IMG/VR virus record: IMGVR_UViG_3300029983_000007
Location: 266,209-330,208 of that record
Reading direction: 5' to 3' (one strand)
DNA length: 64,000 nt
Shown here: positions 348 through 24,294 of the stretch, in pieces
How positions within the stretch are numbered: position 1 is the first letter of the stretch
Layout of the letters: every line of letters starts with the position of its first letter
Position numbers and translations under genes: made by a program
The notes under the pieces: model-generated
Told to the model about the DNA's origin: nothing
The model's database searches: none
Seen by the model: the letters and a program-made list of their open reading frames with translations, nothing else

Positions 348-697
348 AATATATAAAAAAATTTGAAAAATTTGAAAATATTCTAAAAATAGGAGATTAT
401 GTTTTGGCTATATCAAAGGCTAATGATGTGATTTTCACCAGTTATATTAACAATTCAATCGGTGAAGTAATTAAAATTACTCCTGTATATTCTAAAAATG
501 AAGGAAATAAATATAAAGTATACGATGATATTGATATTAGATATTATGGTGTACCAAAAAGTGAAATTGATTTGTTTACAAAAGAAAAAAAGCATAACTC
601 ATATAAAATAAAATTTCCTTCGTATATGATTTATAAATTTTCAGAAAATAAAGAAGAATTAGAAATTGAAATAAACGCAAATAAATTTAACTTATGA
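344..697 (+). CDS. Dual-tag (MKYIKKFE...KFNL) small protein, GDYV SH3/KOW-like subfamily
   Basis: MKYIKKFE start, IGDYVL motif, ANKFNL end, ATGA coupling. Confidence 0.85.
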   Translation: MKYIKKFEKFENILKIGDYVLAISKANDVIFTSYINNSIGEVIKITPVYSKNEGNKYKVYDDIDIRYYGVPKSEIDLFTKEKKHNSYKIKFPSYMIYKFSENKEELEIEINANKFNL

Positions 698-1005
698 AAT
701 ATATAAAAAAATTCGAACAGAATATAGATTTACCAGAAAGAGGTGATTATGTATTAATGAATAGTTATGGAATATCTGAAGTTGAATATTTTGTAACTCA
801 TAATTATGGAGTATATCTTAATGCTTATATTGATAAATTGACTAAAGATCCAAAAATTAGAGTTAGATATGAAAATATACCAGGCAACATAGCTTTGTTT
901 TTTCATGATGACACAATAACATTTGATATGGAGTTATTAGTTGCTTATGGTAAAACAATAGAAGAGTTAGAAATGAAATTAAAAGCAAATAAGTTTAACT
1001 TATGA
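694..1005 (+). CDS. Dual-tag small protein, GDYV subfamily
   Basis: MKYIKKFE, RGDYVL, VRYENIP, ANKFNL. Confidence 0.85.
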   Translation: MKYIKKFEQNIDLPERGDYVLMNSYGISEVEYFVTHNYGVYLNAYIDKLTKDPKIRVRYENIPGNIALFFHDDTITFDMELLVAYGKTIEELEMKLKANKFNL

Positions 1006-1331
1006 AATATATTAAAAAATTTGAATTGAATACAAATATACCTGAGATTGGTGATTATATATTGACAGTATATGACATAAAAAATGATAGAAATACTTCT
1101 ATTAATCAGTTAAAAAAATTCATAGATAATACCATAGGAATAGTAGTAGATGACTTAGAATTTGGTGTACATAATAATTATGTTCGTGTAAAATATGAAA
1201 ACATTCCTGAAAATATAAAGAATTTTTTTATAGATGATAGAAAGAGATTTAATATTGTTAGCATAGTTGATTATGATAAAGATTTAGAAACATTAAAATA
1301 TAAAATTGAAGCAAATAAATTTAACATATGA
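1002..1331 (+). CDS. Dual-tag small protein, GDYV subfamily
   Basis: MKYIKKFE, IGDYIL, VKYENIP, ANKFNI. Confidence 0.85.
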   Translation: MKYIKKFELNTNIPEIGDYILTVYDIKNDRNTSINQLKKFIDNTIGIVVDDLEFGVHNNYVRVKYENIPENIKNFFIDDRKRFNIVSIVDYDKDLETLKYKIEANKFNI

Positions 1332-1663
1332 AATATATAAGGAAGTTTGAAGAAAAAAATAGTGAACCAAAGGAAGGAGATTATGTATTAATGAATTCTA
1401 CAATGATGAATCCTAATCTAAATGAATTTATTGATAATGAAGTTGGTAAAATCGTAAAAATTGATGATAAACGTGGTTTCATATCAGTAGAAGTTGAATA
1501 TGAAAATATTCCTATGGAAATTGCAAGCTTATTTGGATATAATGATTATAAAAATCATGAAAATACAGGAATAAAAGTTTTTTTAATGAGTAGTATAATT
1601 GAATTTTCTGATAACAAAACAGATTTAGAATATAAAATAAACGCAAGAAAATTTAACTTATGA
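1328..1663 (+). CDS. Dual-tag small protein, GDYV subfamily
   Basis: MKYIRKFE, EGDYVL, VEYENIP, ARKFNL. Confidence 0.85.
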   Translation: MKYIRKFEEKNSEPKEGDYVLMNSTMMNPNLNEFIDNEVGKIVKIDDKRGFISVEVEYENIPMEIASLFGYNDYKNHENTGIKVFLMSSIIEFSDNKTDLEYKINARKFNL

Positions 1664-1998
1664 AACATATAAAAAAATTTGAAATATATAAACAGTGGGA
1701 TAATGAAAATAGATATTGGGAAGTGACATTGTTACGTCCATATTTTATTTTATCATTAAGAAAAATCGGAGTTCCAAATGATTTAATTGCGGAATGGGAT
1801 GAACAGTACTTAAATGAAGATCATATTGTATACGTATATAAAGAAGAAATTAAAAATTATGATAGTTTGATTGATGACTATGATATTATAACTGAATGGA
1901 GATTGCAGCTAGATAAAGATGACAGAGATAAATATATATTTGGAGGTAGAATTAAACTTAGAGAATTTGAAATAGATGCAGATAAATTTAACTTATGA
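1660..1998 (+). CDS. Dual-tag small protein (paralog of 37152-37469)
   Basis: MKHIKKFE ... EIDADKFNL. Confidence 0.85.
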   Translation: MKHIKKFEIYKQWDNENRYWEVTLLRPYFILSLRKIGVPNDLIAEWDEQYLNEDHIVYVYKEEIKNYDSLIDDYDIITEWRLQLDKDDRDKYIFGGRIKLREFEIDADKFNL

Positions 1999-6015: not shown

Positions 6016-6819
6016 ATGATCAAAGAAGAATTAATACAGGTATTTGAAGATACTAAACTACACAGTGAAGGTATATTGAAATCTGAAACAACATATCATT
6101 CATTTGATGACAGATTAATGTCAGATGTTAGTATTCCTTGTAGTCAAAACATACAGGTTATTAATTCTGATAGTGTATCTGCTATTACAGAATATAGCAA
6201 ATTAGGGAAAACTTGTGTTCTTAATATGGCATCATTTAAACGTCCAGGTGGTGGAGTTGCAAAAGGCTCAAAAGCACAAGAAGAATGCTTATTTAGGTGC
6301 TCAAATTTGACTCATCTTATTAATACTGATAACTATCCATTAGGAGATGATAAAGCTTTATATACAAAGGATGCAGTATTTTTTAAGGATGTATATTATA
6401 ACTATATGGATGAGGTTAAATCTGATGTCATAACAATTGCAGCACTAAATCTTAAAAATATTGAGGTTAATAGTAATTTTGATACAATATCGAAAGATAA
6501 CATATCATCAATAAATTCTGATGGAGCAAAAATATCAAGGCATGATTATGAAGAATTAACAAAGGAAAAAATAAGATTAATGTTATCACTTGCAATTAAA
6601 AATGATGTTGATATTATTGTATTAGGTTCATTCGGTTGTGGTGTTTTCCAAAATGTTCCTGAAACAATGGCTAAAATGTTTAAAAAATTATTAGTAAATG
6701 AAGGATATTCTAAATATTTTGAGAAAGTAATATTTGCAATCATCAATGATAAAAACTCAGTTGGTAATAATTATGAGATTTTCAAAAATGTTTTTAGTGA
6801 TTATAATTTAATATATTAA
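6016..6819 (+). CDS. Bacterial-type poly(ADP-ribose) glycohydrolase (TIGR02452/DUF2263 macrodomain)
   Basis: VLNMAS-x3-PGGG-x6-AQEE catalytic motif, LGSFGCGVF. Confidence 0.85.
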   Translation: MIKEELIQVFEDTKLHSEGILKSETTYHSFDDRLMSDVSIPCSQNIQVINSDSVSAITEYSKLGKTCVLNMASFKRPGGGVAKGSKAQEECLFRCSNLTHLINTDNYPLGDDKALYTKDAVFFKDVYYNYMDEVKSDVITIAALNLKNIEVNSNFDTISKDNISSINSDGAKISRHDYEELTKEKIRLMLSLAIKNDVDIIVLGSFGCGVFQNVPETMAKMFKKLLVNEGYSKYFEKVIFAIINDKNSVGNNYEIFKNVFSDYNLIY

Positions 6820-11858: not shown

Positions 11859-12169
11859 AATATATAAAAACATTTGAAAAATTAGATAGAAAAATAAAAA
11901 AAGGAGATTATGCTATAATCGATTTTAAAACAACTAATCCTGGAGTTACAGAATTTTTTCAAAATAATATTAGTAAAATTATCGAAGTAAGAGGAATATG
12001 GATTAAATTTGGTTATAAATATGTACCAGAAGAAATCAAGGAATATTTTTATAAATCTAGAGTATATTATATATATCAAATAGAGTTAAACTTAGAAGAT
12101 GTTTACTCTTATGCTATCTCAAAAGAAAAATTAGAATTAGAATTATCAACAAAAAAATTCAACATATGA
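11855..12169 (+). CDS. Dual-tag small protein, GDY subfamily
   Basis: MKYIKTFE, KGDYA, TKKFNI. Confidence 0.8.
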   Translation: MKYIKTFEKLDRKIKKGDYAIIDFKTTNPGVTEFFQNNISKIIEVRGIWIKFGYKYVPEEIKEYFYKSRVYYIYQIELNLEDVYSYAISKEKLELELSTKKFNI

Positions 12170-12744
12170 AATATATAAAAACATTTGAATTATCAACTTT
12201 TTATGATGAAAAAGATATATTTTGGTATATCCATAATATTAATTTACCTAAAATTAAAGAATTAGTATCTGAAATACCTAATATTAATCTTAATATTAAA
12301 GATAGTACTGGTGAAACACCTTTGCTTCAGTCAGTTAGGTTTAGTTTATATAACGTGTTTAAATTTTTGATAGAATCAGGAGCAGATGTAAATTGTACAT
12401 GTACTAATGGAGTCACTCCATTGATGATAGCAGCAAGAAATAAAAAAGAAGAATTTGTTCAAGATTTAATAGATGCTCACGCAGATTTGAATATTAAAAA
12501 TGATGACGGCGAAACTGCATTAATTATGATTTCTAGCTACACAGATAAAAAGGCTTTTAAAATAATTGAAAACTTAATTGAAAGTGGTGCAGATTGGAAT
12601 ATATCTGATAATTATAATAATACTTTTTTGATGCATTTACAACCTGCATATATGAAAAAAATAATAGAAAAATATCCAGATAAATATGAAGAATTTATTA
12701 AAGAATATAATTTTAAAAATGATATAAAAAAATTCAATTTATGA
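12166..12744 (+). CDS. Dual-tag ankyrin-repeat protein
   Basis: GETPLL, GVTPLMIAA, GETALIM, LIESGAD repeats; IKKFNL. Confidence 0.9.
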   Translation: MKYIKTFELSTFYDEKDIFWYIHNINLPKIKELVSEIPNINLNIKDSTGETPLLQSVRFSLYNVFKFLIESGADVNCTCTNGVTPLMIAARNKKEEFVQDLIDAHADLNIKNDDGETALIMISSYTDKKAFKIIENLIESGADWNISDNYNNTFLMHLQPAYMKKIIEKYPDKYEEFIKEYNFKNDIKKFNL

Positions 12745-13142
12745 AATATATAAAAAAATTTGAAAGTGAAATATCAGATGATGAGAAAGCTATTTTGGAT
12801 AGTCAAAAAGCGGAAGATAATTATCTTAGACAAAGATATAAAGATATGAAGAAATATTTATTTTTTAAAGATAGAACGGGTAATATAGATAATGGAACAT
12901 ATTTTATATTAGAAAAAGATAGAATGGAAGCAGTATATGATCACACTAACCTTTTTATTGTGACTAACAAATTATATACATATAATTTGAACACAGATAA
13001 ATTGAAAAATGAAAAAAGAAAAGATAAGCATTACAATTTAAATAAATATAAACTTGGTTATATAATGACAGATTCAGATAATTTACAGGATTTATTAGAT
13101 TATATACCTGCTCTAAAACACACAAATAAATTTAATCTATGA
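12741..13142 (+). CDS. Dual-tag protein
   Basis: MKYIKKFE ... TNKFNL. Confidence 0.8.
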   Translation: MKYIKKFESEISDDEKAILDSQKAEDNYLRQRYKDMKKYLFFKDRTGNIDNGTYFILEKDRMEAVYDHTNLFIVTNKLYTYNLNTDKLKNEKRKDKHYNLNKYKLGYIMTDSDNLQDLLDYIPALKHTNKFNL

Positions 13143-13612
13143 AACACATTAAAACGTTTGAAAATGCATTCACTGACATATTTAAAAAAAGGAAGAAATT
13201 ACCTCACGAAGTTATTAATTTTGGTGATGTATTAACTAAATTTATAGAGAAAAATATTGATATGGAATGGGATGTTTATTCAAATACATATGAAAGTAGT
13301 AATAAAAAATATTATGATGTTGTAAGAATTTTTATTGACCCACATGATATAGATGATGCTGCTGAAGTTTTGGAATTGCATTATAATTATGATAGAAATT
13401 CTATTTTATATTGTTACCATCCAATAATGAATTTTATGGAAGATATTAAAGACTATTTAGGAAATATTGTAAAGAATAGTTCTATTGAAGATGTTTCATC
13501 TGCTGGAGATAATAGATATTGGATACCACTAGATAAATTACCTGAAATAATAAATAAAATAAATAGCTCTGATTTTGATTATTATAAGTCGACAAAAAAA
13601 TTTAACATATGA
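13139..13612 (+). CDS. Dual-tag protein
   Basis: MKHIKTFE ... TKKFNI. Confidence 0.8.
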   Translation: MKHIKTFENAFTDIFKKRKKLPHEVINFGDVLTKFIEKNIDMEWDVYSNTYESSNKKYYDVVRIFIDPHDIDDAAEVLELHYNYDRNSILYCYHPIMNFMEDIKDYLGNIVKNSSIEDVSSAGDNRYWIPLDKLPEIINKINSSDFDYYKSTKKFNI

Positions 13613-13986
13613 AATATATAAAAAAATTTGAACGTAAAAAGAATGAATTTTATACAATTAAAAATGAATTAATTAATGCTGTATATCATGGTAATTATTC
13701 TAAAACTAAAAAATTATTAGATTCTGGCTTTGATGTTAATAGTAATATAGATGGAAGAAATTCTGCATTATTATATGCTTCTTATAAAGGAGAATGGAAT
13801 ATTTTATTTCTAATATTAAAATATAATCCTGATTGGTACATAAAAGATATTTCAAAATATGATTTTATTGACTATATAAATGATCATATAGATGGAGATA
13901 AAGTAATAGAAAAAATAACAAAAAAATATCCTGTTAAATACAATGAGTATTTAATGATAAAAAAATCAGAAAAATTTAATTTATAA
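13609..13986 (+). CDS. Dual-tag ankyrin-repeat protein
   Basis: LINAVYHG, LLDSGFDVN, GRNSALLYA; SEKFNL. Confidence 0.85.
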   Translation: MKYIKKFERKKNEFYTIKNELINAVYHGNYSKTKKLLDSGFDVNSNIDGRNSALLYASYKGEWNILFLILKYNPDWYIKDISKYDFIDYINDHIDGDKVIEKITKKYPVKYNEYLMIKKSEKFNL

Positions 13987-13988
13987 AT

Positions 13989-14294
13989 ATGAAAGTAGAA
14001 AAATTTAATGAGCATAATTTTACAACATTTGATGATGATATTGTATATGCAGGTAAATCTAAATACCCAGTAGGCACCAAAATTAAATTTAAAGATGATG
14101 GTGAGTATTTAACTGGTACTTTGACACATCCATTTGGTTATGGTGATGTTGGTGTATTCTTAGATGAAAAAGGTAAATATAAATATGATAGGGTATCACT
14201 AAAAAACAATGAATATACAGTAATTGATGATGATGTTGATAAATTCATTAAAGATCACAATTTCAAAAAAGATATAAAAAAATTCAATTTATAA
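13989..14294 (+). CDS. Dual-tag protein (variant N-terminus MKVEKFNE)
   Basis: Ends IKKFNL. Confidence 0.8.
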   Translation: MKVEKFNEHNFTTFDDDIVYAGKSKYPVGTKIKFKDDGEYLTGTLTHPFGYGDVGVFLDEKGKYKYDRVSLKNNEYTVIDDDVDKFIKDHNFKKDIKKFNL

Positions 14295-14340
14295 GTGAAA
14301 TAGCTTATAACTTATGTTTATAAGTGAAATAGCTTATAAC
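14289..14340. repeat. Two tandem copies of a 23-nt self-complementary hairpin
   Basis: TTATAAG-TGAAATAG-CTTATAA-C at 14289 and 14318. Confidence 0.85.
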
Positions 14341-14341
14341 G

Positions 14342-14382
14342 AAAAAATCCTATCTAATTTTTCAATTAGATAGGATTTTTTT
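14342..14382. terminator. Bidirectional intrinsic terminator
   Basis: AAAAAATCCTATCTAATT/AATTAGATAGGATTTTTT. Confidence 0.85.
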
Positions 14383-14387
14383 TAATA

Positions 14388-14519
14388 TTGCTTGAGAATA
14401 CAGCATTATAGAGAAGAACTTTAGAAACTATTATTTTTTTCTCACTAACATTTGAATTAGTATTCTTCTAATACAATCTAAGAAATAATTAAACTTCTTT
14501 TGTTGTTAGATAGTTCGGT
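14388..14519 (-). ncRNA. Degenerate stand-alone copy of the 3' module of the large ncRNA
   Basis: Shares TAACAACAAAAG and AATAATA..TT.TAA..TTCTTCT.TATAA....ATT.CTCA blocks with 14725-14870; both abut a terminator. Confidence 0.5.
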
Positions 14520-14675
14520 AAAATGATAAAAAATAATTAAATTCATTAAATTTTAATTAATATTTTACTTTTTTTTCTTCATTCATAGAGGATCTAATGG
14601 ATTTACTCTCCTGAAGCGTTAATTTGGGTGAACTCAACCCTATTTTAATATTTTTTTATTAAAAATAAATAAATG

Positions 14676-14715
14676 AAAAAAAACACTACTTAATATTGAA
14701 TTAAGTAGTGTTTTT
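14676..14715. terminator. Intrinsic terminator after large ncRNA
   Basis: AAAAACACTACTTAAT/ATTAAGTAGTGTTTTT. Confidence 0.8.
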
Positions 14716-14724
14716 ATTTGTAAT

Positions 14725-15735
14725 AGGCTGAGAAATATACCTTATACAGAAGAATCTTAAAAAGTTATTATTGTTTCTACTTTCTTTCCACTAATATTGG
14801 TTTCCCTAACATTAGTAATTCTCAATGACAGTCAATTAGATTAACTAATCCTTTTGTTGTTAATTACTCTCTCAGTACTTATTACCTATCTAGGTTGCCA
14901 CCCAAACTCAATCTTGCTACAGATTTAAGGAATTTTTCTGAAAATCATGTCAAACTTGGGGTTCTTCACGGCTACGACGATTTTCATCTCATAACTAGTA
15001 GTCACCTTTCATCAACAACAGTCGAACACTTTTCCTTTATTTGTTTTATTTTAATTGTGCATTAAATTTGCAATTTAAAGTTTGTTTTGTGGATAATGAA
15101 AGTAGTGGTTCGACAACCAGCGTCTCCATCTTTTGAACGGAAATATACTAAACTACTCTCTGAGATATCCCTATCTCCATATTTTAAGTCAACTAAGATA
15201 CTCTCATAGCACTTGGTAATGCTAAGGTAACCTTAATAACAGCACCACCTGTACATTGTATTACAATCTAATATTACCTTTCGGTTTTAAGCTAACTCTC
15301 ATAATGGACAACGCAATTATACAACTGGAAATCGTATTTCTTGCAATAATCCTTCAGGTTATTCTTATTGATGTTCCCATCTCACTTAGACTACCCACAT
15401 AGCCTTTGCATTAAACCACTTTCTCTACAGTGTTACCCTCGATAATTAAGGTTTAATGATATCCTGATTGTCTGCTCAAACACTAAATAATGTATTAATA
15501 ACAAATTAACTAACTATTAACTATTCATATTAATGAGTATGTGAAGAATCTTACCGAAGCAAAATCAATTACACACAAAAAAATGTGTCAAATTAATAAT
15601 TGTTGTATCTGTTGATTAATAAATAATTTAATGTCGCAAATATATAGAAACAACTACATATTCACTTTATCCTACTTTCGTAGTTTATTTAATGACTACA
15701 GACAGCCAAATATTTTCAATTTTTACAAAGAACGC
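14725..15735 (-). ncRNA. ~1-kb ornate structured ncRNA, ROOL/GOLLD-like (family unverified)
   Basis: ORF-free and GC-richer; minus-strand GNRA hairpins CTAC-GAAA-GTAG (15672-15683), ACC-GAAA-GGT (15276-15285), GAGATA-GGGA-TATCTC (15162-15177); many other stems; terminator at 3' end. Confidence 0.65.
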
Positions 15736-15899
15736 TTTTAATAAAAAACAAACATTTAGATTGTAGTAAAAATTTATACTATCACTTCTTAACTAAAAGA
15801 AGTTAGTTCTAATAAAAGGAATTAACCTTTTAAACTTGTAAATTAACCATTTTCATAGTTATATATACTAATCAATCTAAATGTGTTGTTTCTTGTTGT

Positions 15900-15919
15900 T
15901 TCAAGTACGTTTACTTGAA
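15900..15919. promoter_or_regulatory. Palindromic operator-like site TTCAAGTA-N4-TACTTGAA (copy 1 of 5)
   Basis: Other copies at 16671, 16981, 17569, 18034. Confidence 0.6.
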
Positions 15920-16039
15920 AAATGACACAAATCTATTTCAGTCCATTTTTTTCTTTTCAGAACTTTTTTCAGTGGAACAATAAACATTTGGTATGTTCAT
16001 TATATTTACTGTTATAATATAAATCCTTAAATTTGTATT

Positions 16040-16565
16040 ACATTTGCAACATTTACTTCTGTAATATTAATCGTACACTTTTGCAAGCTTCAAGTTGGCT
16101 TTTGCCTTTGATTATTTTTATTACTTTTTCAATTTCATTAATATCTAAGTGTGTTTAGTTGCACTATCTCCTTTTGCAAGCTTCAAGGTGGTTTCTGTAC
16201 CATTAGATTTTTCATTGCTTTTACTATCTAAGTGTGTTTAATTGCACTATCTCCTTTTGCAAGCTTCAAGGTGGTTTCTATACCATTAGATTTTCAGTTT
16301 CATTTACAATTTAGTTTATTTCTACATGTGTTCATTTATAGTTATACACCTATTGCAAGCTTCAAGGTGATTTCTGTATCAACATTTTTCATTGTATTTG
16401 AAATATATAAGTGTGTTCATTTGCACTATCTCCTTTTGCAAGCTTCAAGGTGGTTTCTATACCATTATATTTCTCATTGTATAAGCAAGATAATTAATAT
16501 GTAAGTGTGTTCATTTGCACTATCTCCTTTTGCAAGCTTCAAGGTGGTATTTTATACCATTACAT
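16040..16565 (-). repeat. Tandem array of six ~66-nt pseudoknot/three-way-junction RNA units
   Basis: Units at ~16040-16097 (degenerate), 16143-16208, 16226-16291, 16322-16385 (degenerate), 16405-16470, 16499-16565; compensatory changes in three stems. Confidence 0.9.
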
Positions 16566-16612
16566 TTTTCATTGCTTCAATCTGAAATTTGATTTGTTTC
16601 ATTATTGTAGTT

Positions 16613-16644
16613 CAAAATTACAAAAAGTTTTTTGTTTTACCAAA
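16613..16644 (-). promoter_or_regulatory. Bacteroidota-type promoter driving the RNA array
   Basis: Minus strand TTTG-N20-TAATTTTG; palindrome upstream at 16671-16690. Confidence 0.75.
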
Positions 16645-16810
16645 TATTTAATGTTAAAGTTTTGAACTTTTTCAAGTACTCTTACTTGAATGAGTATTAA
16701 AAAACCAAGTCATTTATAAGTTCTGTTAGCTTCTCAGCTTAGAAAAATAAACTTTCATTTGTCATATTTATTCTTGTAACTTTACAAATCTGCGAAATGT
16801 ATTATTATCA

Positions 16811-16877
16811 ATCTAAGTGTGTTCATTTGCACTATCTCCTTTTGCAAGCTTCAAGGTGGTATTTTATACCATTAGAT
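16811..16877 (-). ncRNA. Seventh copy of the 66-nt pseudoknot motif
   Basis: Near-identical to 16499-16565, own promoter at 16921-16952. Confidence 0.8.
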
Positions 16878-16920
16878 TATCTATTAAATCTGATATATGT
16901 TTTGCTTTTTTATTGTAGTT

Positions 16921-16952
16921 CAAAATTACAAAAAGTTTTTTGTTTTACCAAA
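16921..16952 (-). promoter_or_regulatory. Bacteroidota-type promoter
   Basis: TTTG-N20-TAATTTTG. Confidence 0.75.
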
Positions 16953-17072
16953 TATTTAATGTTAAAGTTTGAACTATTTTTTCAAGTACTCCTACTTGTT
17001 TTTGTTATGAATAATAATCAAGGAACTTACTTCTTCTGACAAGTCAGTGTTTCAGTGTTAAAATTAATATTC

Positions 17073-17163
17073 ATAGTGAAGATAGATGGAGTTGAACCCA
17101 GTGTCAGTAACACTTGCCTTCTGCACAATTCGAATCGTGCTGCACCCTGTGTGCTTATCTTCA
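17073..17163 (-). tRNA. tRNA(Sec)-like element with non-canonical anticodon loop
   Basis: 8-bp acceptor TGAAGATA/TATCTTCA, D stem GCAC/GTGC, anticodon arm GCACGA-TTCGAA-TTGTGC (6-nt loop), long variable arm, GTTCAACTCC T-loop; no CCA. Confidence 0.55.
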
Positions 17164-17506
17164 TCATTTTTATAATTTAATCAATAGTCAGTCCTTGTAG
17201 AGAAATAATAGCAGTCAGTCACTGATCATCTGACATTAGGTTCACACATCATCAAAAATTAATTTGATAGGTAATTTCCACGGTGTAGTTACTATTTACA
17301 TTTATAACAAGATAAGTTCTACAGTTCTCATATCTATTTCAATGGACTTTTCATCTTTGATAATTTTCATTATCATTAACTCACCACTATTAGCATCAAA
17401 TTCATCTGGTTCATATATATTTTGTTACAAACATATACACTCTGATTTCAGATATTGCTGATATTTCTTGTTTAAATCTGATTTTTTGATTTAAATTATT
17501 GTAGTA

Positions 17507-17538
17507 CAAATATACAAAAAGTTTTTTGTTTTACCAAA
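17507..17538 (-). promoter_or_regulatory. Bacteroidota-type promoter
   Basis: TTTG-N20-TATATTTG. Confidence 0.7.
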
Positions 17539-17760
17539 TATTTTTTGATATTTTTTCTACATTTTTTACTCAAGTACGTTTACAAGAGTTTTAAAAAATC
17601 AAATCATTTTTCAGTTCTTTTTATCTTCACAGATTAGAAATAACATTTTTTCATTTGTTATATTTACTTCTGTAACATTAAATTTATGTATTTTCAGTTT
17701 CACTATAATCTTGTTCAAGATTAAGGGTGGTTTCCTTACTACTAAATTGTGATTACTTTA

Positions 17761-17826
17761 ATCTAAGTGTGTTCATTTGCACTATCATTCTCTTGCAAGC
17801 TTTGAGAGGTTTTTATACCATTAGAT
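17761..17826 (-). ncRNA. Eighth, divergent copy of the pseudoknot motif
   Basis: Pseudoknot stem CCTT/AAGG replaced by TCTC/GAGA; other stems kept. Confidence 0.8.
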
Positions 17827-17865
17827 TTTTTTCAATCTGAAATTTGATTTGTTTTTATTGTAGTT

Positions 17866-18125
17866 CAAAATTACAAAAAGTTTTTTGTTTTACCAAATAT
17901 TTAATGTTAAAGTTTTGAACTTTTTTTCAATTGAAATTTAATTTTTGTGATTATATTTCTTTTGATATTGTAGTGCAAAATTACAAAAAGTTTTTTGTTT
18001 TACCAAATATTTAATGTTAAAGTTTTGAACTTTTTCAAGTACTCTTACTTGAAGTTTTTTGTTTTTTATTGTAGTACAAAATTAATAAAAGTTTTTGATA
18101 CTACCAAATATTTAATGTTAAAGTT
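17866..18125 (-). promoter_or_regulatory. Three stacked near-identical Bacteroidota-type promoters
   Basis: TAATTTTG elements at 17866, 17976, 18077 within a repeated ~60-nt block. Confidence 0.7.
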
Positions 18126-18131
18126 TCAGTT

Positions 18132-18470
18132 TTAATATACGCATTCATATCCATCTGAATTCTCAAGTGTTTCAATAATTTCCAATAAAAAATCATTAAA
18201 GTTTTTACTTGTATAATCTTTTGAAAAGAAATAATGATATTTTTCTAAAATCTCATCTCCTCTATTATAAAACAATTTTAATTTTGTTGCAGTATCTAAT
18301 GCATCATCTTTTGACATTTCATGAGCCATATCTGCATAGTGCTCATTTTGACAATATTCATTATCTTGAAATTTCGCACCAATTTCTCTACATAAAGTTT
18401 CAATTAGATGTTCTCTATTTATGCTTGTTATAAACTTAATACCACTTTTTGTAATAATAGTTTTACTCAT
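18132..18470 (-). CDS. Hypothetical protein
   Basis: 112-aa ORF behind promoter at 18496-18527. Confidence 0.7.
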   Translation of the reverse strand: MSKTIITKSGIKFITSINREHLIETLCREIGAKFQDNEYCQNEHYADMAHEMSKDDALDTATKLKLFYNRGDEILEKYHYFFSKDYTSKNFNDFLLEIIETLENSDGYECVY

Positions 18471-18545
18471 ATATTTATGTTTTTAAACTGAATTACAAAA
18501 TTACAAAAAGATTTTCATACTACCAAACATTCACAAGTTAATTTT

Positions 18546-18890
18546 TCAATTATTTTTAAAATCTTCCAATGTTTTGTAATAACTACACATATTTTCAATT
18601 GAATAGAAAACTAATATATTATTTTTTATTGCAAATTCAACTTCCTTATCTGCACCACTTGATTCTCCTGGTAATCTCAATATACAATCACATACTGGAA
18701 TCCACTCAAAATCAATTTTAAGCCAATCTTCATATGGTCTAGGATGAGCCATATGCTGAAAATGTGAATATAATGGTGTAAATGGCACAAAACCTTTATT
18801 CATTAATTCATCTGCTGTGTCCATTTGTATTTTAACATTAACAGCAACATCACCTTTTGTATATGGTGAAGCTATATAAACTTTAATCAT
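18546..18890 (-). CDS. DUF4406/DUF1937-like nucleoside deoxyribosyltransferase-fold protein
   Basis: KVYIASPYT, CDCILRLPGESSGADKEVEFA. Confidence 0.75.
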   Translation of the reverse strand: MIKVYIASPYTKGDVAVNVKIQMDTADELMNKGFVPFTPLYSHFQHMAHPRPYEDWLKIDFEWIPVCDCILRLPGESSGADKEVEFAIKNNILVFYSIENMCSYYKTLEDFKNN

Positions 18891-18925
18891 ATTTTTATTT
18901 TATTTTTTAATATATATATGATATA

Positions 18926-19453
18926 ATGAAAAATATAAAAAGTTTTGATAAATACAATGAAGATGTACTAACTGATGGTTTTACTCCTGAGAATGCAAGG
19001 TATAATGCAGGTATAAAAGCAAATAGAATAATATATCAACTTAAAAATTTATTATTACCTGTTGGTAAATTAACTGAGCAAGTTGTCACAAGGTCAATTG
19101 AATCAATAAATTCATTAAATAGAATTATTAATGATGAAATTATTGAAGATGATGCTATGATAACTCAATTAAAAAAATCAGATACTTCAAATACAATATT
19201 TGATGTTATAAAAAATATTGAAGTTAATCAAAATGGTATAAATAGATCTACAAATAAATACTCAGCTACAATAAATACTTTGTGGTTAGGAGGAAAAAAA
19301 TATGATTTAATAGTAAAGCCATTATCATTTTGGTTGAATATGGCAAAAAAAGACAGAGAAACAGAAAATAAAATATCCAATCAACTATGTGGTTGGATAA
19401 ATAGTAATATAAATTTAACTATTGAATCATTAAATAAAATAACACACAAATGA
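18926..19453 (+). CDS. Protein with N-terminal tag only (MKNIKSFDKYNE)
   Basis: TAATATATA at 18908-18916; tag-like start, no KFNL end. Confidence 0.7.
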   Translation: MKNIKSFDKYNEDVLTDGFTPENARYNAGIKANRIIYQLKNLLLPVGKLTEQVVTRSIESINSLNRIINDEIIEDDAMITQLKKSDTSNTIFDVIKNIEVNQNGINRSTNKYSATINTLWLGGKKYDLIVKPLSFWLNMAKKDRETENKISNQLCGWINSNINLTIESLNKITHK

Positions 19454-19995
19454 GCAAACCAATTAAAATAATAGGTATAATATTATTTAGTTTTATACTT
19501 ATTTTTATAGCATATGAAATATTCATACCAACTAAAGATTATCCTTTTAGTAAAATTGAAATTGTTAATTATCATCATCTATATAACTTAACAAATAGAA
19601 CTTATCTAGATACAATTGTAGAATCAGGATTACAATCACTTAAAATTGATACTGTTACTGTTGTTATTAAAAATATTGATAAATCATCAATAGTAATTAA
19701 TGGCGAAGATATTGATTTGAAAGCATATATAGTAGTTAATAACGATACATATTATATATTTATTGGTGACTATAGTAGAAATGAAAGTATTACAATATTA
19801 TCTCATGAATTAATTCATTTAAGACAATATTATGACAAAATGTTATTAATTAGTAGAACAGGAGTTTATTTATGGCTTGGTGATGTTATAGATATATCAA
19901 ATATGGATTATAATCAAAGACCTTGGGAAATAGAAGCATTTGATAATCAATCAGATAATGCAAATGCAATGAAATATATTTTATATAAATTATAA
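19450..19995 (+). CDS. Membrane-anchored HExxH metallopeptidase-like protein
   Basis: N-terminal TM helix, LSHELIHLRQ, PWEIEA. Confidence 0.75.
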   Translation: MSKPIKIIGIILFSFILIFIAYEIFIPTKDYPFSKIEIVNYHHLYNLTNRTYLDTIVESGLQSLKIDTVTVVIKNIDKSSIVINGEDIDLKAYIVVNNDTYYIFIGDYSRNESITILSHELIHLRQYYDKMLLISRTGVYLWLGDVIDISNMDYNQRPWEIEAFDNQSDNANAMKYILYKL

Positions 19996-20337
19996 GTTGA
20001 ATTTTTTTGATGCATTAATTATATTATAAAACTCTTCTGTTGTAAATTTATTTGGAAAAAAGTATTTACTATCTCCGTCATCTTTATCACAAATAATATA
20101 TCCTTTTTTATCTCTAAGTGTTATTATATCTCCATCACCTATTTTATAAACATTATTATAAGATCTCTTACCATTATATTCTGAATATTTTAAAATAGAA
20201 TCAATAATATATATCTCACCATATTTCAAATAATTACTCTGAAGTCCAATATATATAATTTCATCACCTATTTTTAAATCATTTAAGTAATCAGGATTAT
20301 CATGTTGTACTTCATATATTTTAAAATTTGTTATCAT
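19990..20337 (-). CDS. Dual-tag protein (MITNFKIYE...KKFNL)
   Basis: Variant N-tag, IGDEI motif, C-tag. Confidence 0.8.
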   Translation of the reverse strand: MITNFKIYEVQHDNPDYLNDLKIGDEIIYIGLQSNYLKYGEIYIIDSILKYSEYNGKRSYNNVYKIGDGDIITLRDKKGYIICDKDDGDSKYFFPNKFTTEEFYNIINASKKFNL

Positions 20338-20687
20338 ATATTAAATTTATTAGTTTGTGTTAAAAATTCTAATTTTGATTTATCATCAGATATATGAATC
20401 AATTCTTCTAATGAAAAAGACATGGCATTTTTATATTTTTTGCTATAATCTATTTCGCTATGATAAATTTGATATGATTCTAAATAATCAGGAATATAAT
20501 CAAATTGAACTATAAATCTATCCCAACGATATTTAATATCAATAATTTCTATTATCTGTCCTATATTACTTAATGTAAAACTATTTAGTTCAGTAAAATC
20601 AATACTTTCACATATAACATAATCTCCAATAGATGGTAGTATTGATGATTTTTTATTTTTTTCATATATTTTAAAATCTGTTATCAT
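20334..20687 (-). CDS. Dual-tag protein (MITDFKIYE...NKFNI), GDYV subfamily
   Basis: IGDYVIC motif, ATGA coupling. Confidence 0.8.
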   Translation of the reverse strand: MITDFKIYEKNKKSSILPSIGDYVICESIDFTELNSFTLSNIGQIIEIIDIKYRWDRFIVQFDYIPDYLESYQIYHSEIDYSKKYKNAMSFSLEELIHISDDKSKLEFLTQTNKFNI

Positions 20688-20983
20688 ACATTAAAATTGT
20701 TGGATTTATTAATTAATTTCAGTCTATCTTCTAATATTTTTCTAACTGATGAGTATTTGTATACATCTTTTTTATCTATCCAAAAACCATCTTCATGATA
20801 ATAATCTTTAAAATCAATTTTATATTGTGATTTACTTTTATTTATTATTTTAAAAATATTATTGCTTATTTTGGTTTTATATTGAATATCATAATTTATT
20901 CCTTTAAGAACAGGTATAACATAATAATCAACAGGTATTTCTATCTGGTTATTAACAAATTCATATTTTTTTATATATTTCAT
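20684..20983 (-). CDS. Dual-tag protein (MKYIKKYE...NNFNV)
   Basis: Minus-strand TAATATATA at 21017-21025. Confidence 0.8.
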   Translation of the reverse strand: MKYIKKYEFVNNQIEIPVDYYVIPVLKGINYDIQYKTKISNNIFKIINKSKSQYKIDFKDYYHEDGFWIDKKDVYKYSSVRKILEDRLKLINKSNNFNV

Positions 20984-21089
20984 AATTATATTTTATAATT
21001 TATATTTTTGATATACTATATATTAAAAATAAAAATAACAATCTTATTTTTTTATATATAATATAAACAATAAAACAGCACAATTATAT

Positions 21090-22733
21090 ATGTTAAAATA
21101 TGATGATTATAATAAATTGAATGAGGCTTTCTTTCATCGTAGTAAAGATGAGTTAGAAAATCTCATACATTCATTTAAAAGCTTGATTATAAATCTAAAA
21201 CAATCAATAGATAAAAAATATACATTAGATTTCTATAAAACTCAAATCAAAGAGGATTTAGAATCATATAAAATAAATATATTGAATAATTACAATAAAA
21301 ATACAATTAGTAAATTTAAAGATTTGTTTAAAGAATTTTTAAATAATGTAGATAATGACATAATTAAGCATATGAAATTAGGTAAATTTGCTAATGATAT
21401 ATTAAAGATATATTCTATTAATAATTCTTTTGATATTAACATAAAGAATGTAAATAGTGTGTTTAAAGCTTATCTTGATAATGTTGATAGATATATAGAC
21501 AACACATATGATTTTTTCTACAATAAGATTGAGACTGATAAATCATATGAACCATATAATAAAATTGATATTAAAATAAATAAAGTCCCTATTGATGAAT
21601 ATCAAAAAACAAAATACAAATATCAAATTGAGTTATTAAAATTACAAGAATGGATTACATACAACAATAAAAAAGTATTGATTATATTTGAAGGTAGGGA
21701 TGCTGCAGGAAAAGGTTCAGCGATTAGAAATATCACAAGATTTCTAGATCCAAAGCATTTTAGAGTACAGACATTTGGTATACCTACAGAAGAAGAGAGT
21801 AATAATTGGTTTGATAGATATGAAAAATCTTTACCTAAAAATGGAGAAATTGTTTTTTTTGATAGATCTTGGTATACAAGAGGTTATGTTGAACCAGTGA
21901 TGAAATATTCAACTGAAGATAAATATAATAAATTTATGAAAGAAGTCAATAACTTTGAAGATAAATTAATAGATGATGACATCATACTTATAAAAATATG
22001 GTTCTCCATATCTCAAGATGTACAAAAAATGAGATTTGAATTAAGAAAATCTAATCCATTGAAATACTGGAAGTTTAGTAAGAATGATGAGCAAACATTA
22101 GACAAATGGGATGAATTTACTAAATATATAAATGAGATTTTCAAAAAAACAAATACTAAAGATTCTCCTTGGATAATAATAGATGCTGATGATGAAAATT
22201 ATTCAAGATTAGAATCTTTCAATAGTATAATAAAATCAATAGAAAAAGATAAATCAAACATCAAAGAGGGTGGAATAAAAGTAATATTTGAAGATTTAGA
22301 TGGACCATTAATTCCATATGATAAAAATTCAGATACCGACTATCATAAATTTTTTAATGATCCAGAAAAATGGAGTAAGACTGCTATGAGCAATTTAAAC
22401 AATATTATTGAAAAGACAGAAGCAAAAGTAGTATTATCTTCTTCATATAGAGATGATAAACCATTAAGCGAAATAGAAAAGATGATGAAAACTGCTGGAT
22501 TTAAATATAAAATATATGACGTTGTTCCAAATGACAAATCTAAAAAACGTGGATCTGATATAAAAGATTGGTTAAAGAATAATAAATCAGTTAGTAATTT
22601 TATTATTATTGACGATAATAAGCATGACTTATATGAAGTATTTAGCAAAAAACACATTGTTAAAACTACTCATGAATTAGGAATAACAGATGATATTAAA
22701 GATGAAGCTATTGATAAATTAAATACTAAATGA
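21090..22733 (+). CDS. ppk2: Polyphosphate kinase 2 fused to C-terminal HAD-like domain, with N-terminal extension
   Basis: FEGRDAAGKG Walker A, FDRSWY Walker B, LKYWKFS; C-terminal FEDLDGPL, VVLSSSYR, FIIIDD. Confidence 0.9.
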   Translation: MLKYDDYNKLNEAFFHRSKDELENLIHSFKSLIINLKQSIDKKYTLDFYKTQIKEDLESYKINILNNYNKNTISKFKDLFKEFLNNVDNDIIKHMKLGKFANDILKIYSINNSFDINIKNVNSVFKAYLDNVDRYIDNTYDFFYNKIETDKSYEPYNKIDIKINKVPIDEYQKTKYKYQIELLKLQEWITYNNKKVLIIFEGRDAAGKGSAIRNITRFLDPKHFRVQTFGIPTEEESNNWFDRYEKSLPKNGEIVFFDRSWYTRGYVEPVMKYSTEDKYNKFMKEVNNFEDKLIDDDIILIKIWFSISQDVQKMRFELRKSNPLKYWKFSKNDEQTLDKWDEFTKYINEIFKKTNTKDSPWIIIDADDENYSRLESFNSIIKSIEKDKSNIKEGGIKVIFEDLDGPLIPYDKNSDTDYHKFFNDPEKWSKTAMSNLNNIIEKTEAKVVLSSSYRDDKPLSEIEKMMKTAGFKYKIYDVVPNDKSKKRGSDIKDWLKNNKSVSNFIIIDDNKHDLYEVFSKKHIVKTTHELGITDDIKDEAIDKLNTK

Positions 22734-22737
22734 TATT

Positions 22738-23145
22738 ATGAAATATTTAAAAAAATATGAAATGTTAAACAAATTAGACACATCAGATAATCCTATATTT
22801 ATAGAATTTATGATTAATTTCATAACATCTTTAGATTATGACTTAACCACAAATTACAATAAAAAATACTCTAGAAATGAGATATTTTTTTATAACAAAG
22901 ATATAAATTCTGAGGGTTTAAAATTTTGTATTGAAATAACAAATGATGAATTAATTTTTAAAAAATACCATAATAATTTTAAGATTATTGAAGAATATTT
23001 AGAAACTATCAATGGATTAAATTTAATAAATATTGATCATCACATATACAACTTTAAGATATCAGGAAATACTCTAGATATCGAAGAACAGATAACAAAA
23101 AAGAATTTTGATATGTTTAGAGAAGCAAATAAATTTAATTTATGA
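22738..23145 (+). CDS. Dual-tag protein
   Basis: MKYLKKYE ... ANKFNL. Confidence 0.8.
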   Translation: MKYLKKYEMLNKLDTSDNPIFIEFMINFITSLDYDLTTNYNKKYSRNEIFFYNKDINSEGLKFCIEITNDELIFKKYHNNFKIIEEYLETINGLNLINIDHHIYNFKISGNTLDIEEQITKKNFDMFREANKFNL

Positions 23146-23483
23146 AATATTTAAAAAAGTTTGAATCTAAAGAAGTAGATTTATTTAATGCTATTGTAAA
23201 TGACAACACAAAAAGAGTTGAATATTTAATTAGACTTAATGCTGATATAAACATTCAAGATGCTGAAGGTAGAACTCCATTATTTTATGCAGCAAATCAT
23301 GATTTTATGAGTATTGTTAATATACTTATTGAAGCAGGAGCGGATTGGAATATTATTAACAACAAAGGATATGATTTTACATATTTATTAAGTGATAAAC
23401 AATTTGATTATATTATGAAAAAATATCCTGATGAATATAAAGAATATTTAATGAAAAAAACAGCAAACAAATTTAACTTATGA
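23142..23483 (+). CDS. Dual-tag ankyrin-repeat protein
   Basis: LFNAIVND, GRTPLFYAA, LIEAGADWN; ANKFNL. Confidence 0.9.
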   Translation: MKYLKKFESKEVDLFNAIVNDNTKRVEYLIRLNADINIQDAEGRTPLFYAANHDFMSIVNILIEAGADWNIINNKGYDFTYLLSDKQFDYIMKKYPDEYKEYLMKKTANKFNL

Positions 23484-23911
23484 ACCATTTAAAAATATAT
23501 GATAATTATAAAGATAAAATGAATTCAAAGAACAAATTCAATAATATGATAAATGAGTATATACCAGGATATTACATGATATATAAATCTAATACTTATC
23601 ATTGGAAGCAACATAGATACAATGAATATATAGTATTATGTAGAATTATAAATCCAGAAGTTTTTGATGAAGTGGATCTAAGATTAAACATAGATATTCT
23701 ATCTTATTTTTGTGAATTAGAACAACATGAATTAAGGGAAGATGAAAAAATAAAGACTGGAAAACAAATAATAAATCCAAATCATTCAACGTTTGAAAGA
23801 TTATTTTTGTCATCGTCATTAAAAACATCTCAAGATAAATTTGAAGAATTGAAAGAAACTACATATTATCAATGGGAATTAAATAAAGTCACAGATAAAT
23901 TTAACTTATGA
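23480..23911 (+). CDS. Dual-tag protein
   Basis: MNHLKIYD ... TDKFNL. Confidence 0.8.
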   Translation: MNHLKIYDNYKDKMNSKNKFNNMINEYIPGYYMIYKSNTYHWKQHRYNEYIVLCRIINPEVFDEVDLRLNIDILSYFCELEQHELREDEKIKTGKQIINPNHSTFERLFLSSSLKTSQDKFEELKETTYYQWELNKVTDKFNL

Positions 23912-24294
23912 AAACATTCAATCAATACAATGAATCTATAAAAAATAAACATTTTCCTATATATTTTAGAAGATATTATGAATCAGGTAGATATAAAATA
24001 TCAGATATATATTACGACATTGAACAAGCAAATAAATATAGTATTGAATATGTTCTATTTAATAATACCACTAAAGGAGATGAGTTCTTTTACTTATATT
24101 TATTTCCATGTAATGAAAATGAATCTAAAATTATTAGTTCTGAGTTAATAGGTATGTTTAATCTATCAAGTATATTTAATGAAGACTTAACAACAGAAGA
24201 AAATATAGAATTAATAAAAACATCAAAAAATGCGAATATTATAAATTTAGAAGATGTAAATTTAATAATAAATTCAAATAAATTTAATATATGA
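23908..24294 (+). CDS. Dual-tag protein, T4-CTS-like start MKTFNQYNE
   Basis: Paralog of next two ORFs; INSNKFNI. Confidence 0.8.
   Translation: MKTFNQYNESIKNKHFPIYFRRYYESGRYKISDIYYDIEQANKYSIEYVLFNNTTKGDEFFYLYLFPCNENESKIISSELIGMFNLSSIFNEDLTTEENIELIKTSKNANIINLEDVNLIINSNKFNI

What the first reader, a model, noticed from the sequence alone, without database searches (positions are those of the whole stretch)
14725..15735. ~1-kb ornate non-coding RNA (ROOL/GOLLD-class candidate, apparently extended)
Seen: no ORF of 60 aa or more on either strand; raised GC; GNRA-capped hairpins only in the minus sense; further stems (AATAACC-TGAA-GG(A)TTATT, TAGCA/TGCTA, AATCT/AGATT, GTAGT/ACTAC); clean terminator at 14676-14715. 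Blocks such as ATAAGAATAAC..GCAAGA..TAATTGCG..TTATGAGAGT..GGTGCTGTTA recall ROOL RNA as I remember it (unverified). Known: ROOL and GOLLD are large phage/prophage-associated RNAs of unknown function, reported to form RNA-only multimers; ROOL is typically about 600 nt. A longer Bacteroidota-phage version beside a pseudoknot array would be notable.
Basis: partly seen in the sequence, partly recalled or inferred. Interest (0 to 1): 0.7.

Follow-up and report, generated by a model that had tools for sequence, protein, structure and literature searches.

The report
GOLLD RNA with an extra arm
The ORF-free ~1 kb stretch is a complete gene for GOLLD RNA, a known giant phage RNA that self-assembles into RNA-only cages, carried by a huge peat-bog phage; it is ordinary for its family except for one extra 156-nt hairpin arm that makes it unusually long.

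Summary
Window 14725-15740 (minus strand) is a non-coding, GC-enriched, terminator-ended RNA gene. It is GOLLD, not ROOL. Rfam RF02032 matches 14725-15160 end to end at 243 bits (cut-off 150). The Rfam model covers only the 3' domain. The upstream ~580 nt are the 5' domain of the same type as the cryo-EM-solved env-38 GOLLD: the same blocks occur in more than 90 viral contigs, and 12 of 12 tested carry the Rfam 3' domain. Of 110 consensus pairs, 85 show compensatory change, and the window forms 99. The sequence determinants I could locate for inter-subunit bridges B1-B10 are present. The "extended" impression is real. One hairpin (P5 by order) is 13-31 nt in 84 homologues and 156 nt here, a 60-bp AT-rich UUCG-capped arm. 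Peat DNA assemblies also hold arm-less and alternative-arm alleles, so it is a strain polymorphism, not an intron. Peat metatranscriptome contigs cover GOLLD at high depth and the flanking genes at zero. The host genome is a ~330 kb fragment of a huge phage related to the 635-735 kb phages, probably infecting Bacteroidota. Verdict: a new member of a known family with an unusual expansion segment. Interest is modest.

The parts
14725..15740 (-). Complete GOLLD RNA: the conserved body, 1016 nt, comprising 5' leader block, 5' domain, linker and 3' domain
   Evidence: Rfam match plus conservation and covariation of the upstream part across about 90 homologues
14725..15160 (-). GOLLD 3' domain (P14-P27), the part that Rfam RF02032 models
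   Evidence: 243.3 bits against a gathering score of 150, E 6.6e-68, model positions 1-416 of 416, not truncated
15161..15740 (-). GOLLD 5' domain of the env-38 type. The start of the env-38 construct corresponds to about 15709, and the conserved leader block GTTCTTTG lies at 15734-15725
   Evidence: Blocks shared with env-38 and with 36 diverse homologues. 110 consensus pairs, 83-85 with changes on both sides; the window forms 99 of 110
15479..15634 (-). Expansion arm: hairpin P5 (named by order) lengthened to 156 nt, about 60 bp, with a UUCG-type cap and 20.5% GC
   Evidence: This site is 13-31 nt in 84 homologues and is a gap in at least 96% of homologues. It folds as one long hairpin, z = -5.3. 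Arm-less and alternative alleles occur in DNA runs
15672..15683 (-). P3/L3 hairpin CTAC-GAAA-GTAG. In env-38 the loop adenosines make bridge B1 to a neighbouring chain
   Evidence: The GAAA is invariant and the stem covaries (UA:19/CG:18, AU:22/GC:9 and others). B1 residues A34 and A35 come from Suppl. Table 2 of PMC12286853
15277..15284 (-). CC-GAAA-GG hairpin, matched here to env-38's conserved non-contacting loop L11a
   Evidence: Conserved in the alignment. L11a is described in PMC12286853. The correspondence is my own reading of the env-38 sequence
15238..15254 (-). Invariant 17-mer GTACAGGTGGTGCTGTT. It holds the UGGU that makes bridge B5 with the ACCA at about 15207-15213
   Evidence: An exact 17-mer in more than 120 viral contigs.
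15036..15097 (-). A-rich variable linker (J13/15), disordered and facing the cage interior in env-38. Its 3' end holds the GG that pairs with the L20 loop CCCAA (bridge B7)
   Evidence: Rfam alignment. GG/CC against GC/GC co-variation among homologues
15011..15020 (-). Pseudoknot, 5' strand (UGUUGUUGAU)
   Evidence: Rfam structure line '[[[['. It pairs with 14855-14864: 9 Watson-Crick pairs and 1 G-U
14855..14864 (-). Pseudoknot, 3' strand (AUUAACAACA)
   Evidence: Rfam structure line ']]]]'
14679..14715 (-). Intrinsic terminator of GOLLD, a hairpin that reads as a terminator on both strands
   Evidence: 16-bp stem followed by a T-run. RNA-library depth falls below about 14700
15769..15798 (-). 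Putative weak Bacteroidota-type promoter (TTTT, 18 nt, TAAATTTT) followed by the same ACTACAAT start region as the strong cassettes upstream
   Evidence: Read from the sequence. Homologues carry TAnnTTTG at the equivalent place. This is an inference; the transcription start was not mapped
14380..14520 (-). Decayed tandem duplicate of the last ~165 nt of GOLLD, with its own hairpin and U-run at about 14342-14376
   Evidence: Rfam sub-threshold match, 30.8 bits, model 306-415. Pairwise alignment to the main copy. Little RNA depth

Best explanation
This is the gene for a full-length GOLLD RNA of a huge tailed phage from peat. It is transcribed on the minus strand from about 15765 to the terminator at about 14680, roughly 1.09 kb. 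The RNA has the two-domain architecture of the solved env-38 GOLLD. A 5' domain (15740-15161) forms the cap of the cage. An A-rich linker follows. The conserved 3' domain (15160-14725) forms the ring. The sequence determinants I could locate for the env-38 inter-subunit bridges are present, including both L21a and L21b. I therefore infer that the RNA self-assembles, without protein, into an env-type homo-oligomeric nanocage, most likely a 14-mer. What is shown: family membership, the domain structure, the boundaries, covariation, and presence in RNA libraries. What is inferred: cage assembly and its stoichiometry. The extra length comes from one hairpin of the P3-P4-P5 junction, called P5 by its order. 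It has grown from about 20 nt to a 156-nt, roughly 60-bp, AT-rich arm. Its base helix, the part that takes the A-minor and ribose-zipper contacts in env-38, is kept through compensatory changes. In env-38 the tip of this hairpin makes none of the listed contacts. I read the arm as a tolerated, dispensable expansion segment, comparable to rRNA expansion segments, and polymorphic in the phage population. The biological role of GOLLD is unknown. The published hypothesis is a cage that holds or sequesters parts of the translation apparatus (tRNAs, ribosomes) during lytic growth. That is compatible with the tRNA and tmRNA neighbours in relatives and the RNA-repair genes in this window, but nothing here tests it.
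For: Rfam GOLLD matches end to end at 243.3 bits against a 150-bit cut-off. The 5' blocks are shared with env-38 and with more than 90 viral contigs. 12 of 12 nearest homologous loci carry the Rfam 3' domain at 279-330 bits. Covariation: 110 consensus pairs, 83-85 with changes on both sides against 37-47 in slid controls; 96.8% of cells pair against 37-41%; the window forms 99 of 110. Bridge determinants read against Suppl. Tables 1-2 of PMC12286853: L3 GAAA, GAGGGUAAC, the GGAA loop, UCC x GGA, UGGU x ACCA, the L14 A-run, L20 CC x J13/15 GG with co-variation, GC in L21a and GCA in L21b, and the L24 GAAA. Arm: 156 nt against 13-31 nt in 84 homologues; one long hairpin, z = -5.3; no bridge or listed motif uses env-38 nt 78-96; arm-less and alternative-arm alleles occur in DNA assemblies. 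Expression: metatranscriptome contigs at depths of hundreds to about 2000 over GOLLD and zero over the flanking genes at 14000-14434, including a 100%-identical contig inside the arm; DNA runs show flat depth. Phage identity: tail-fibre proteins and relatives among the 635-735 kb phages.
Against: No assembly, stoichiometry or arm orientation can be computed here. Small secondary-structure differences are known to change GOLLD stoichiometry, giving 10-, 12- and 14-mers (PMC12990946). A 20-nm arm on every subunit could clash if P5 points into the cage or toward the cap pore. The Rfam score is the lowest among the relatives tested (243 against 275-330 bits). Most RNA-library contigs are 90-95% identical, so they come from related strains. 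They are assembler contigs, not reads, so transcript ends are not mapped. Unlike most GOLLDs, this one has no tRNA within about 39 kb. My mapping of bridge residues uses a PDF-extracted env-38 sequence whose numbering drifts by 1-4 nt, so some assignments are approximate.
Confidence: 0.85

Rival explanations
1. The arm is a functional add-on. It could be a long dsRNA spike that recruits a phage or host dsRNA-binding protein, changes cage stoichiometry or opening, or serves as a decoy, and is kept in part of the population by selection.
For: It is a clean, coaxial, capped helix and not random sequence (z = -5.3). A second allele with a different 120-nt sequence of similar length occupies the same site, so arm length may be retained while sequence changes. 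The arm-bearing form is present in RNA libraries.
Against: Arm-less alleles coexist in DNA and RNA at 90-95% identity. The arm's GC (20.5%) equals the genomic background, not the RNA's 32.8%. None of 84 homologues has anything similar. I had no homologous arms with which to test covariation.
Confidence: 0.12
2. The gene is a decaying GOLLD. A palindromic insertion disrupted the 5' domain, so the RNA no longer assembles and is on its way to loss.
For: It has the lowest Rfam score among relatives. A decayed partial duplicate lies next to it. GOLLD is patchy in the clade, absent from three of five large relatives. The inserted sequence is AT-rich like the genome.
Against: 99 of 110 consensus 5' pairs are kept, as are the pseudoknot and all the bridge determinants I could locate. 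The insertion extends a helix from its tip and does not interrupt a strand or a junction. Near-identical RNA is abundant in metatranscriptomes. The arm is single-copy, so it is not a dispersed element.
Confidence: 0.08
3. The arm is removed after transcription, like an intron or by processing, so the mature RNA has normal GOLLD length.
For: RNA-library contigs join 15479 to 15662, skipping 182 nt, in two runs.
Against: The same arm-less joint occurs in a DNA assembly (15476->15660, X1), and the joined contigs differ from the window at many other positions, so they are other strains. An RNA-library contig 100% identical to the window runs across the 3' base of the arm (15440-15613). A 156-nt plain hairpin has no features of a group I or II intron, and no Rfam intron family matched.
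Confidence: 0.03
4. It is a ROOL-class RNA.
For: Only a recalled resemblance of sequence blocks.
Against: Rfam's only significant family is GOLLD, and nothing else reaches E<=1 except a chance snoRNA hit. The recalled blocks align to the GOLLD env-38 5' domain.
Confidence: 0.01

Closest known systems
GOLLD env-38 (marine metagenome; 833 nt; cryo-EM 14-mer, PDB 9MEE; Kretsch et al. 2025, PMC12286853)
   Same: It has the same two-domain plan and the same type of 5' domain, with shared blocks from the first helix onward. It also shares the L3 GAAA, the L11a-like GAAA, both L21a and L21b, the pseudoknot, the A-rich linker, and the sequence determinants I could locate for bridges B1-B10.
   Different: P5 is 156 nt here and about 23 nt in env-38. 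Total length is about 985 nt from the equivalent start, against 833. The sequence is very AT-rich. No Met-tRNA lies directly upstream, as it does in env-38 and LR745206. The B7 kissing pair is CC/GG, whereas the Rfam consensus has GC/GC.
GOLLD genes of the huge uncultured phages LR745206.1 (635 kb) and LR756502.1 (642 kb)
   Same: These are related phages (36-37% identity over a 1059-aa protein), each with one GOLLD of the same 5'-domain type (287 and 275 bits).
   Different: They have a short P5. LR745206's GOLLD sits directly after a tRNA-Met. I found no paper that mentions GOLLD in these phages, but that is only a text search.
Streptococcus agalactiae GOLLD (700 nt; 12-mer; 3' domain alone mainly a 10-mer)
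   Same: It has the same 3' domain family and forms cages.
   Different: The Sag RNA lacks P9, P11a-c and P21b (PMC12990946). The window has the L11a-like and L21b elements, so it is closer to env-38.
ROOL RNA (Rfam; 8-mer or 6-mer cages)
   Same: It is also a large phage-borne RNA that forms RNA-only cages, so it probably works in a comparable way.
   Different: Its sequence and secondary structure are unrelated, and it has no Rfam match here. The window's RNA is not a member.
Ribosomal RNA expansion segments (an analogy, from general knowledge)
   Same: A lineage-specific helical extension grows from the tip of a peripheral conserved helix while the core contacts are kept.
   Different: It is a different molecule. 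Here the extension is polymorphic within one phage population.

Membership tests
GOLLD (Rfam RF02032) | Covariance-model score at or above the curated gathering score over the whole 3'-domain model | tested here: met
   243.3 bits against 150, model 1-416 of 416, E 6.6e-68
GOLLD (Rfam RF02032) | Long-range pseudoknot of the 3' domain | tested here: met
   15011-15020 pairs with 14855-14864: 9 Watson-Crick pairs and 1 G-U, at the model's bracket positions
GOLLD (Rfam RF02032) | A structured 5' domain upstream of the 3' domain, joined by a variable linker | tested here: met
   The 5' domain is homologous to env-38 and to 36 aligned homologues. 110 pairs, 83-85 compensatory; the window forms 99 of 110. 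The A-rich linker is at 15036-15097
GOLLD (Rfam RF02032) | Sequence determinants of the inter-subunit bridges seen in the env-38 cage (B1-B10) | tested here: met
   L3 GAAA, GAGGGUAAC, the GGAA loop, UCC x GGA, UGGU x ACCA, the L14 CAAAA, L20 CC x J13/15 GG (co-varying), L21a GC, L21b GCA and L24 GAAA were read. The residue mapping is approximate, and for B1, B3, B6 and B10 only the donor side was checked
GOLLD (Rfam RF02032) | Self-assembly into a closed RNA-only homo-oligomer | not testable with these tools
   This needs in-vitro transcription followed by mass photometry or cryo-EM
GOLLD (Rfam RF02032) | Encoded by a phage or prophage | tested here: met
   The record is an IMG/VR virus record. 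It has tail-fibre and virion proteins and relatives among huge phages
GOLLD (Rfam RF02032) | Location next to tRNA genes (typical of the family, not obligatory) | tested here: not met
   The nearest tRNA is about 39 kb away, and no tRNA is found in 15700-18200 even with introns allowed. Relatives do have a tRNA upstream, and 5 of 12 have a tmRNA nearby
GOLLD (Rfam RF02032) | Expressed as an abundant discrete RNA | tested here: inconclusive
   RNA-library contigs reach depth of about 2000 over GOLLD and 0 over the flanking genes, while DNA runs are flat. These are contigs, mostly from 90-95% relatives, and no transcript ends were mapped
ROOL / OLE (other large ornate RNAs) | A match to the family's covariance model | tested here: not met
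   Permissive Rfam scan of 14000-18500 at E<=1 returned only GOLLD (twice) and a chance snoU30 hit
Lak megaphages (genome context) | TAG-recoded genetic code, a gut Prevotella host, and close sequence similarity | tested here: not met
   Code 11 gives 82% ORF coverage with no gain from TAG read-through. The source is peat. Only 66 nt of DNA similarity and 28% identity in one protein. Lak-B1 has no GOLLD

The most novel reading that the evidence does not exclude
The 156-nt P5 arm is not neutral. In this reading the cage carries fourteen ~20-nm double-stranded RNA spikes, or is forced into a different stoichiometry or an open state. The arm, alternative-arm and arm-less alleles coexisting in peat would then reflect selection, for example an arms race over a host dsRNA-sensing or RNA-binding factor. 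That would make this locus a natural experiment on what the GOLLD cage surface does.
Probability: 0.1. Interest if true: 0.6.

Novelty: new member of a known kind. Interest (0 to 1): 0.3.

Why it matters
GOLLD function is an open question, and its cage structure was solved only in 2025. This locus adds three modest points. First, GOLLD occurs, patchily, in the clade that holds the largest known phage genomes. Second, environmental metatranscriptomes from peat, permafrost and wetland hold GOLLD at depths far above the neighbouring phage genes, which is evidence of expression in the field. Third, it is a natural case of a long helix inserted at the tip of P5, together with arm-less and alternative alleles in the same population. 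That marks P5 as a site that probably tolerates insertions, which is useful for anyone engineering these cages, and it supplies matched natural variants for assembly experiments. None of this changes what GOLLD is understood to be.

Tried and rejected
- **ROOL or OLE membership.** No Rfam match.
- **Arm as a dispersed repeat or mobile element.** It is single-copy in the 330 kb record.
- **Arm as an intron or processed segment.** The arm-less joint also exists in DNA, and an RNA-library contig identical to the window crosses the arm base.
- **Arm site as L11a, the conserved loop facing the cap pore.** This was my first thought. Residue numbers and contact tables place the site at env-38 nt ~76-98 in the P3-P4-P5 junction, and the L11a-like GAAA lies elsewhere, at 15277-15284.
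- **tRNA-like element at about 17090-17175.** ARAGORN does not call it, even with introns allowed and relaxed thresholds, and neither does Rfam.
- **Alternative genetic code, as in Lak phages.** No support.
- **Lak-phage membership.** Not supported.
- **L006 as an independent homologue.** It is the same sequence as window 12324-24293.
- **First MAFFT pairwise alignment.** It misplaced the 5' end because of the arm. This was corrected by BLAST and multiple alignment.
- **First regex anchoring attempt.** It failed and was redone.
- **B7 regex.** It parsed only 18 of 94 sequences, so that co-variation count is a sample.

Full report
**Observation.** The interval is as described. Between 14295 and 16231 no ORF reaches 60 aa on either strand. 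GC rises to 0.30-0.35 against 0.19-0.24 in the flanks. A 16-bp hairpin followed by a T-run sits at 14679-14715.

**Identity.** Rfam release 15 places a complete GOLLD match (RF02032) at 14725-15160 on the minus strand. It scores 243.3 bits against a gathering score of 150, E 6.6e-68, covering model positions 1-416. A permissive scan of 14000-18500 adds only a 30.8-bit partial GOLLD match at 14390-14491 and a chance snoRNA hit. So this is GOLLD, not ROOL.

**The remaining 580 nt.** The Rfam model covers only the conserved 3' domain. Kretsch et al. [quoted passage not shown]

- The env-38 sequence in their Supplementary Table 4 begins with the same blocks as window ~15709 onward.
- A 17-mer from this region (GTACAGGTGGTGCTGTT) occurs in more than 120 IMG/VR contigs, and a second block occurs in 25.
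- BLAST and multiple alignment of 93 non-identical homologues show conservation from the block GTTCTTTG (15734-15725) down to 14725.
- All 12 of the nearest homologous loci carry a full Rfam GOLLD 3' domain at 279-330 bits directly downstream. The 5' blocks therefore belong to GOLLD.

**Covariation.** In an alignment of the window with 36 homologues below 88% pairwise identity (A2), RNAalifold predicts 110 pairs, and 83 keep pairing through changes on both sides. In my own recount, 96.8% of cells pair, against 37-41% when partners are slid by 1-3 columns. 85 pairs show double-sided change, against 37-47 in the slid controls. The window forms 99 of 110 pairs, against 33-46 slid, and five of its eleven misses are alignment artefacts at the arm.

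**Cage determinants.** I read the window against the intra- and intermolecular contact tables of the paper and the helix names in the review PMC12990946. I could locate the following:

| Bridge | Determinant in the window |
|---|---|
| B1 | L3 GAAA |
| B2 | GAGGGUAAC |
| B3 | GGAA loop |
| B4 | UCC facing GGA in UAGGGAUA |
| B5 | UGGU facing ACCA |
| B6 | L14 CAAAA |
| B7 | L20 CCCAA facing GG in J13/15 |
| B8, B9 | GC in L21a, GCA in L21b |
| B10 | L24 GAAA |

- For B7, the pair co-varies among homologues: GG with CCCAA in 13 cases, GC with CGCAA in 4, one exception.
- The 10-bp pseudoknot is intact.
- The residue mapping is approximate, because the PDF-extracted env-38 sequence drifts by 1-4 nt.
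- The window has the L11a-like and L21b elements that the 12-mer-forming Sag GOLLD lacks, so it resembles the 14-mer-forming env-38.
- Assembly itself is an inference.

- Between the anchors TGCG and RAGYA, 84 homologues have 13-31 nt, mostly a 5-8 bp stem with a GNRA or UUCG cap. The window has 156 nt.
- Total length from the 5' block to the 3' end is 982 nt, against a typical 780-860. A few others reach 916-1009 through insertions elsewhere.
- The segment 15634-15479 folds into one long hairpin of about 60 bp with a UUCG-type cap (-41.9 kcal/mol with its flanks, z = -5.3, no shuffle as stable).
- In the MFE fold of the whole domain it continues the conserved base helix.
- In env-38 this hairpin spans about nt 76-98. 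Its base takes an A-minor and a ribose-zipper contact (A26, A44-45 with G76, U77, G97). Its tip appears in no listed contact or bridge. By order in the P3-P4-P5 junction it is P5.
- The arm is 20.5% GC, like the genome, while the rest of the RNA is 32.8%. It occurs once in the 330 kb record.

**Population and expression data.** The sequence is held by many peat metagenomes.

- In four metatranscriptome assemblies, contigs cover 14732-15479 and 15653-15739 at summed word depths of hundreds to about 2000. The adjacent genes at 14000-14434 are at zero in all four. One contig identical to the window lies at 15440-15613, inside the arm.
- Two RNA runs also hold contigs, 90-95% identical, that join 15479 to 15662.
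- In DNA assemblies depth is flat across genes and GOLLD. One run holds the same arm-less joint (15476->15660). Two hold an allele in which 118 nt of the arm are replaced by 120 other letters.
- The arm is therefore a DNA-level polymorphism at a hypervariable tip, not a processing product.
- These are assembler contigs, so transcript ends are not mapped. The fall in depth below about 14700 and above about 15750 agrees with the terminator and with a weak Bacteroidota-type promoter at 15769-15798.

**Genome context.**

- The window is the last 64 kb of a 330 kb IMG/VR record that CheckV rates 46% complete.
- It uses the standard genetic code and encodes tail-fibre and virion proteins.
- A 1059-aa protein is 36-37% identical to proteins of the 635-735 kb uncultured phages LR745206 and LR756501-04. 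More distant matches are in Flavobacterium, Tenacibaculum, Chryseobacterium and Lak (Prevotella) phages.
- The Bacteroidota promoter motif TTTG-N(17-23)-TAnnTTTG is enriched, 22 matches against 7.7 expected. GOLLD homologues carry TAnnTTTG upstream. A Bacteroidota host is therefore likely but not proven.
- GOLLD is present in LR745206 and LR756502. It is absent from LR756501, LR756504, LR756500 and Lak-B1.
- The record has 13 tRNAs, none within about 39 kb of GOLLD. Most relatives have a tRNA just upstream, and 5 of 12 have a tmRNA nearby.
- Here GOLLD instead sits at the end of a 3.8 kb ORF-poor island of repeated promoters and ~70-nt units.

**Verdict.** This is a canonical env-type GOLLD RNA gene in a new host lineage. 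It would be found by any Rfam annotation. It is unusual in one respect only: a polymorphic 156-nt expansion of P5. It is a new member of a known kind, of modest interest.

Noticed in passing
window 14380-14520 (-), hairpin and U-run at about 14342-14376: A decayed tandem duplicate of the last ~165 nt of GOLLD. It keeps the 3' pseudoknot strand TAACAACAAAAG and the 3' end TTCTCAGC, has its own terminator-like hairpin, and shows little RNA depth.
   Followed up: partly
window ~15900-18130 (-): An ORF-poor island upstream of GOLLD on the same strand. It has six near-identical Bacteroidota-type promoter cassettes (16613-16644, 16921-16952, 17507-17538, 17866-17897, 17976-18007, 18077-18108) and at least 7 copies of a ~70-nt unit with core CTTGAAGCTTGCAA (16094-16855). 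There is no Rfam match. RNA-library depth over 15914-16600 is 125-500 in one run.
   Followed up: partly
window 14607-14674: A short segment between the GOLLD terminator and the decayed copy is 82% identical to seven Prevotella Lak-B phages. In peat DNA assemblies it adjoins several different flanking sequences. It is single-copy in this record.
   Followed up: partly
window 21090-22733 (+) and 30663-31601 (-): RNA-repair-type genes: a PPK2 fused to the 'Swiss Army Knife RNA repair' HAD domain, and a polynucleotide kinase/3'-phosphatase-like protein (AAA_33 + PNK3P).
   Followed up: no
window 40627-42087 (+): A TnpB-like protein (OrfB_IS605 + Cas12f1-like TNB domain) next to a radical-SAM protein (39715-40608).
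   Followed up: no
window 54486-54574 and 54706-54805 (-): Two tRNA matches with long internal insertions of about 30 nt. ARAGORN calls only the first, as tRNA-Phe with the unusual anticodon AAA.
   Followed up: no
G000:C1:217514-217848: A cluster of four tRNA-Gln genes (three UUG, one CUG) in the same phage record. No suppressor tRNA was seen, and there is no sign of stop-codon recoding.
   Followed up: partly
L020, L052, L045, L069, L142 (relatives): Phage-encoded tmRNA genes lie within 1-3 kb of GOLLD in 5 of 12 related viral loci. Most of the 12 also have a tRNA on the same strand a few hundred nt upstream of GOLLD.
   Followed up: no
window 344-1998 (+) and 36832-39338 (+): Runs of five and eight consecutive ~100-115-aa ORFs with 4-nt overlaps, which look like tandem arrays of small paralogous genes.
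   Followed up: no
window 6016-6819 (+), 12166-12744 (+): A microbial-type poly(ADP-ribose) glycohydrolase domain protein and an ankyrin-repeat protein in the phage accessory region.
   Followed up: no
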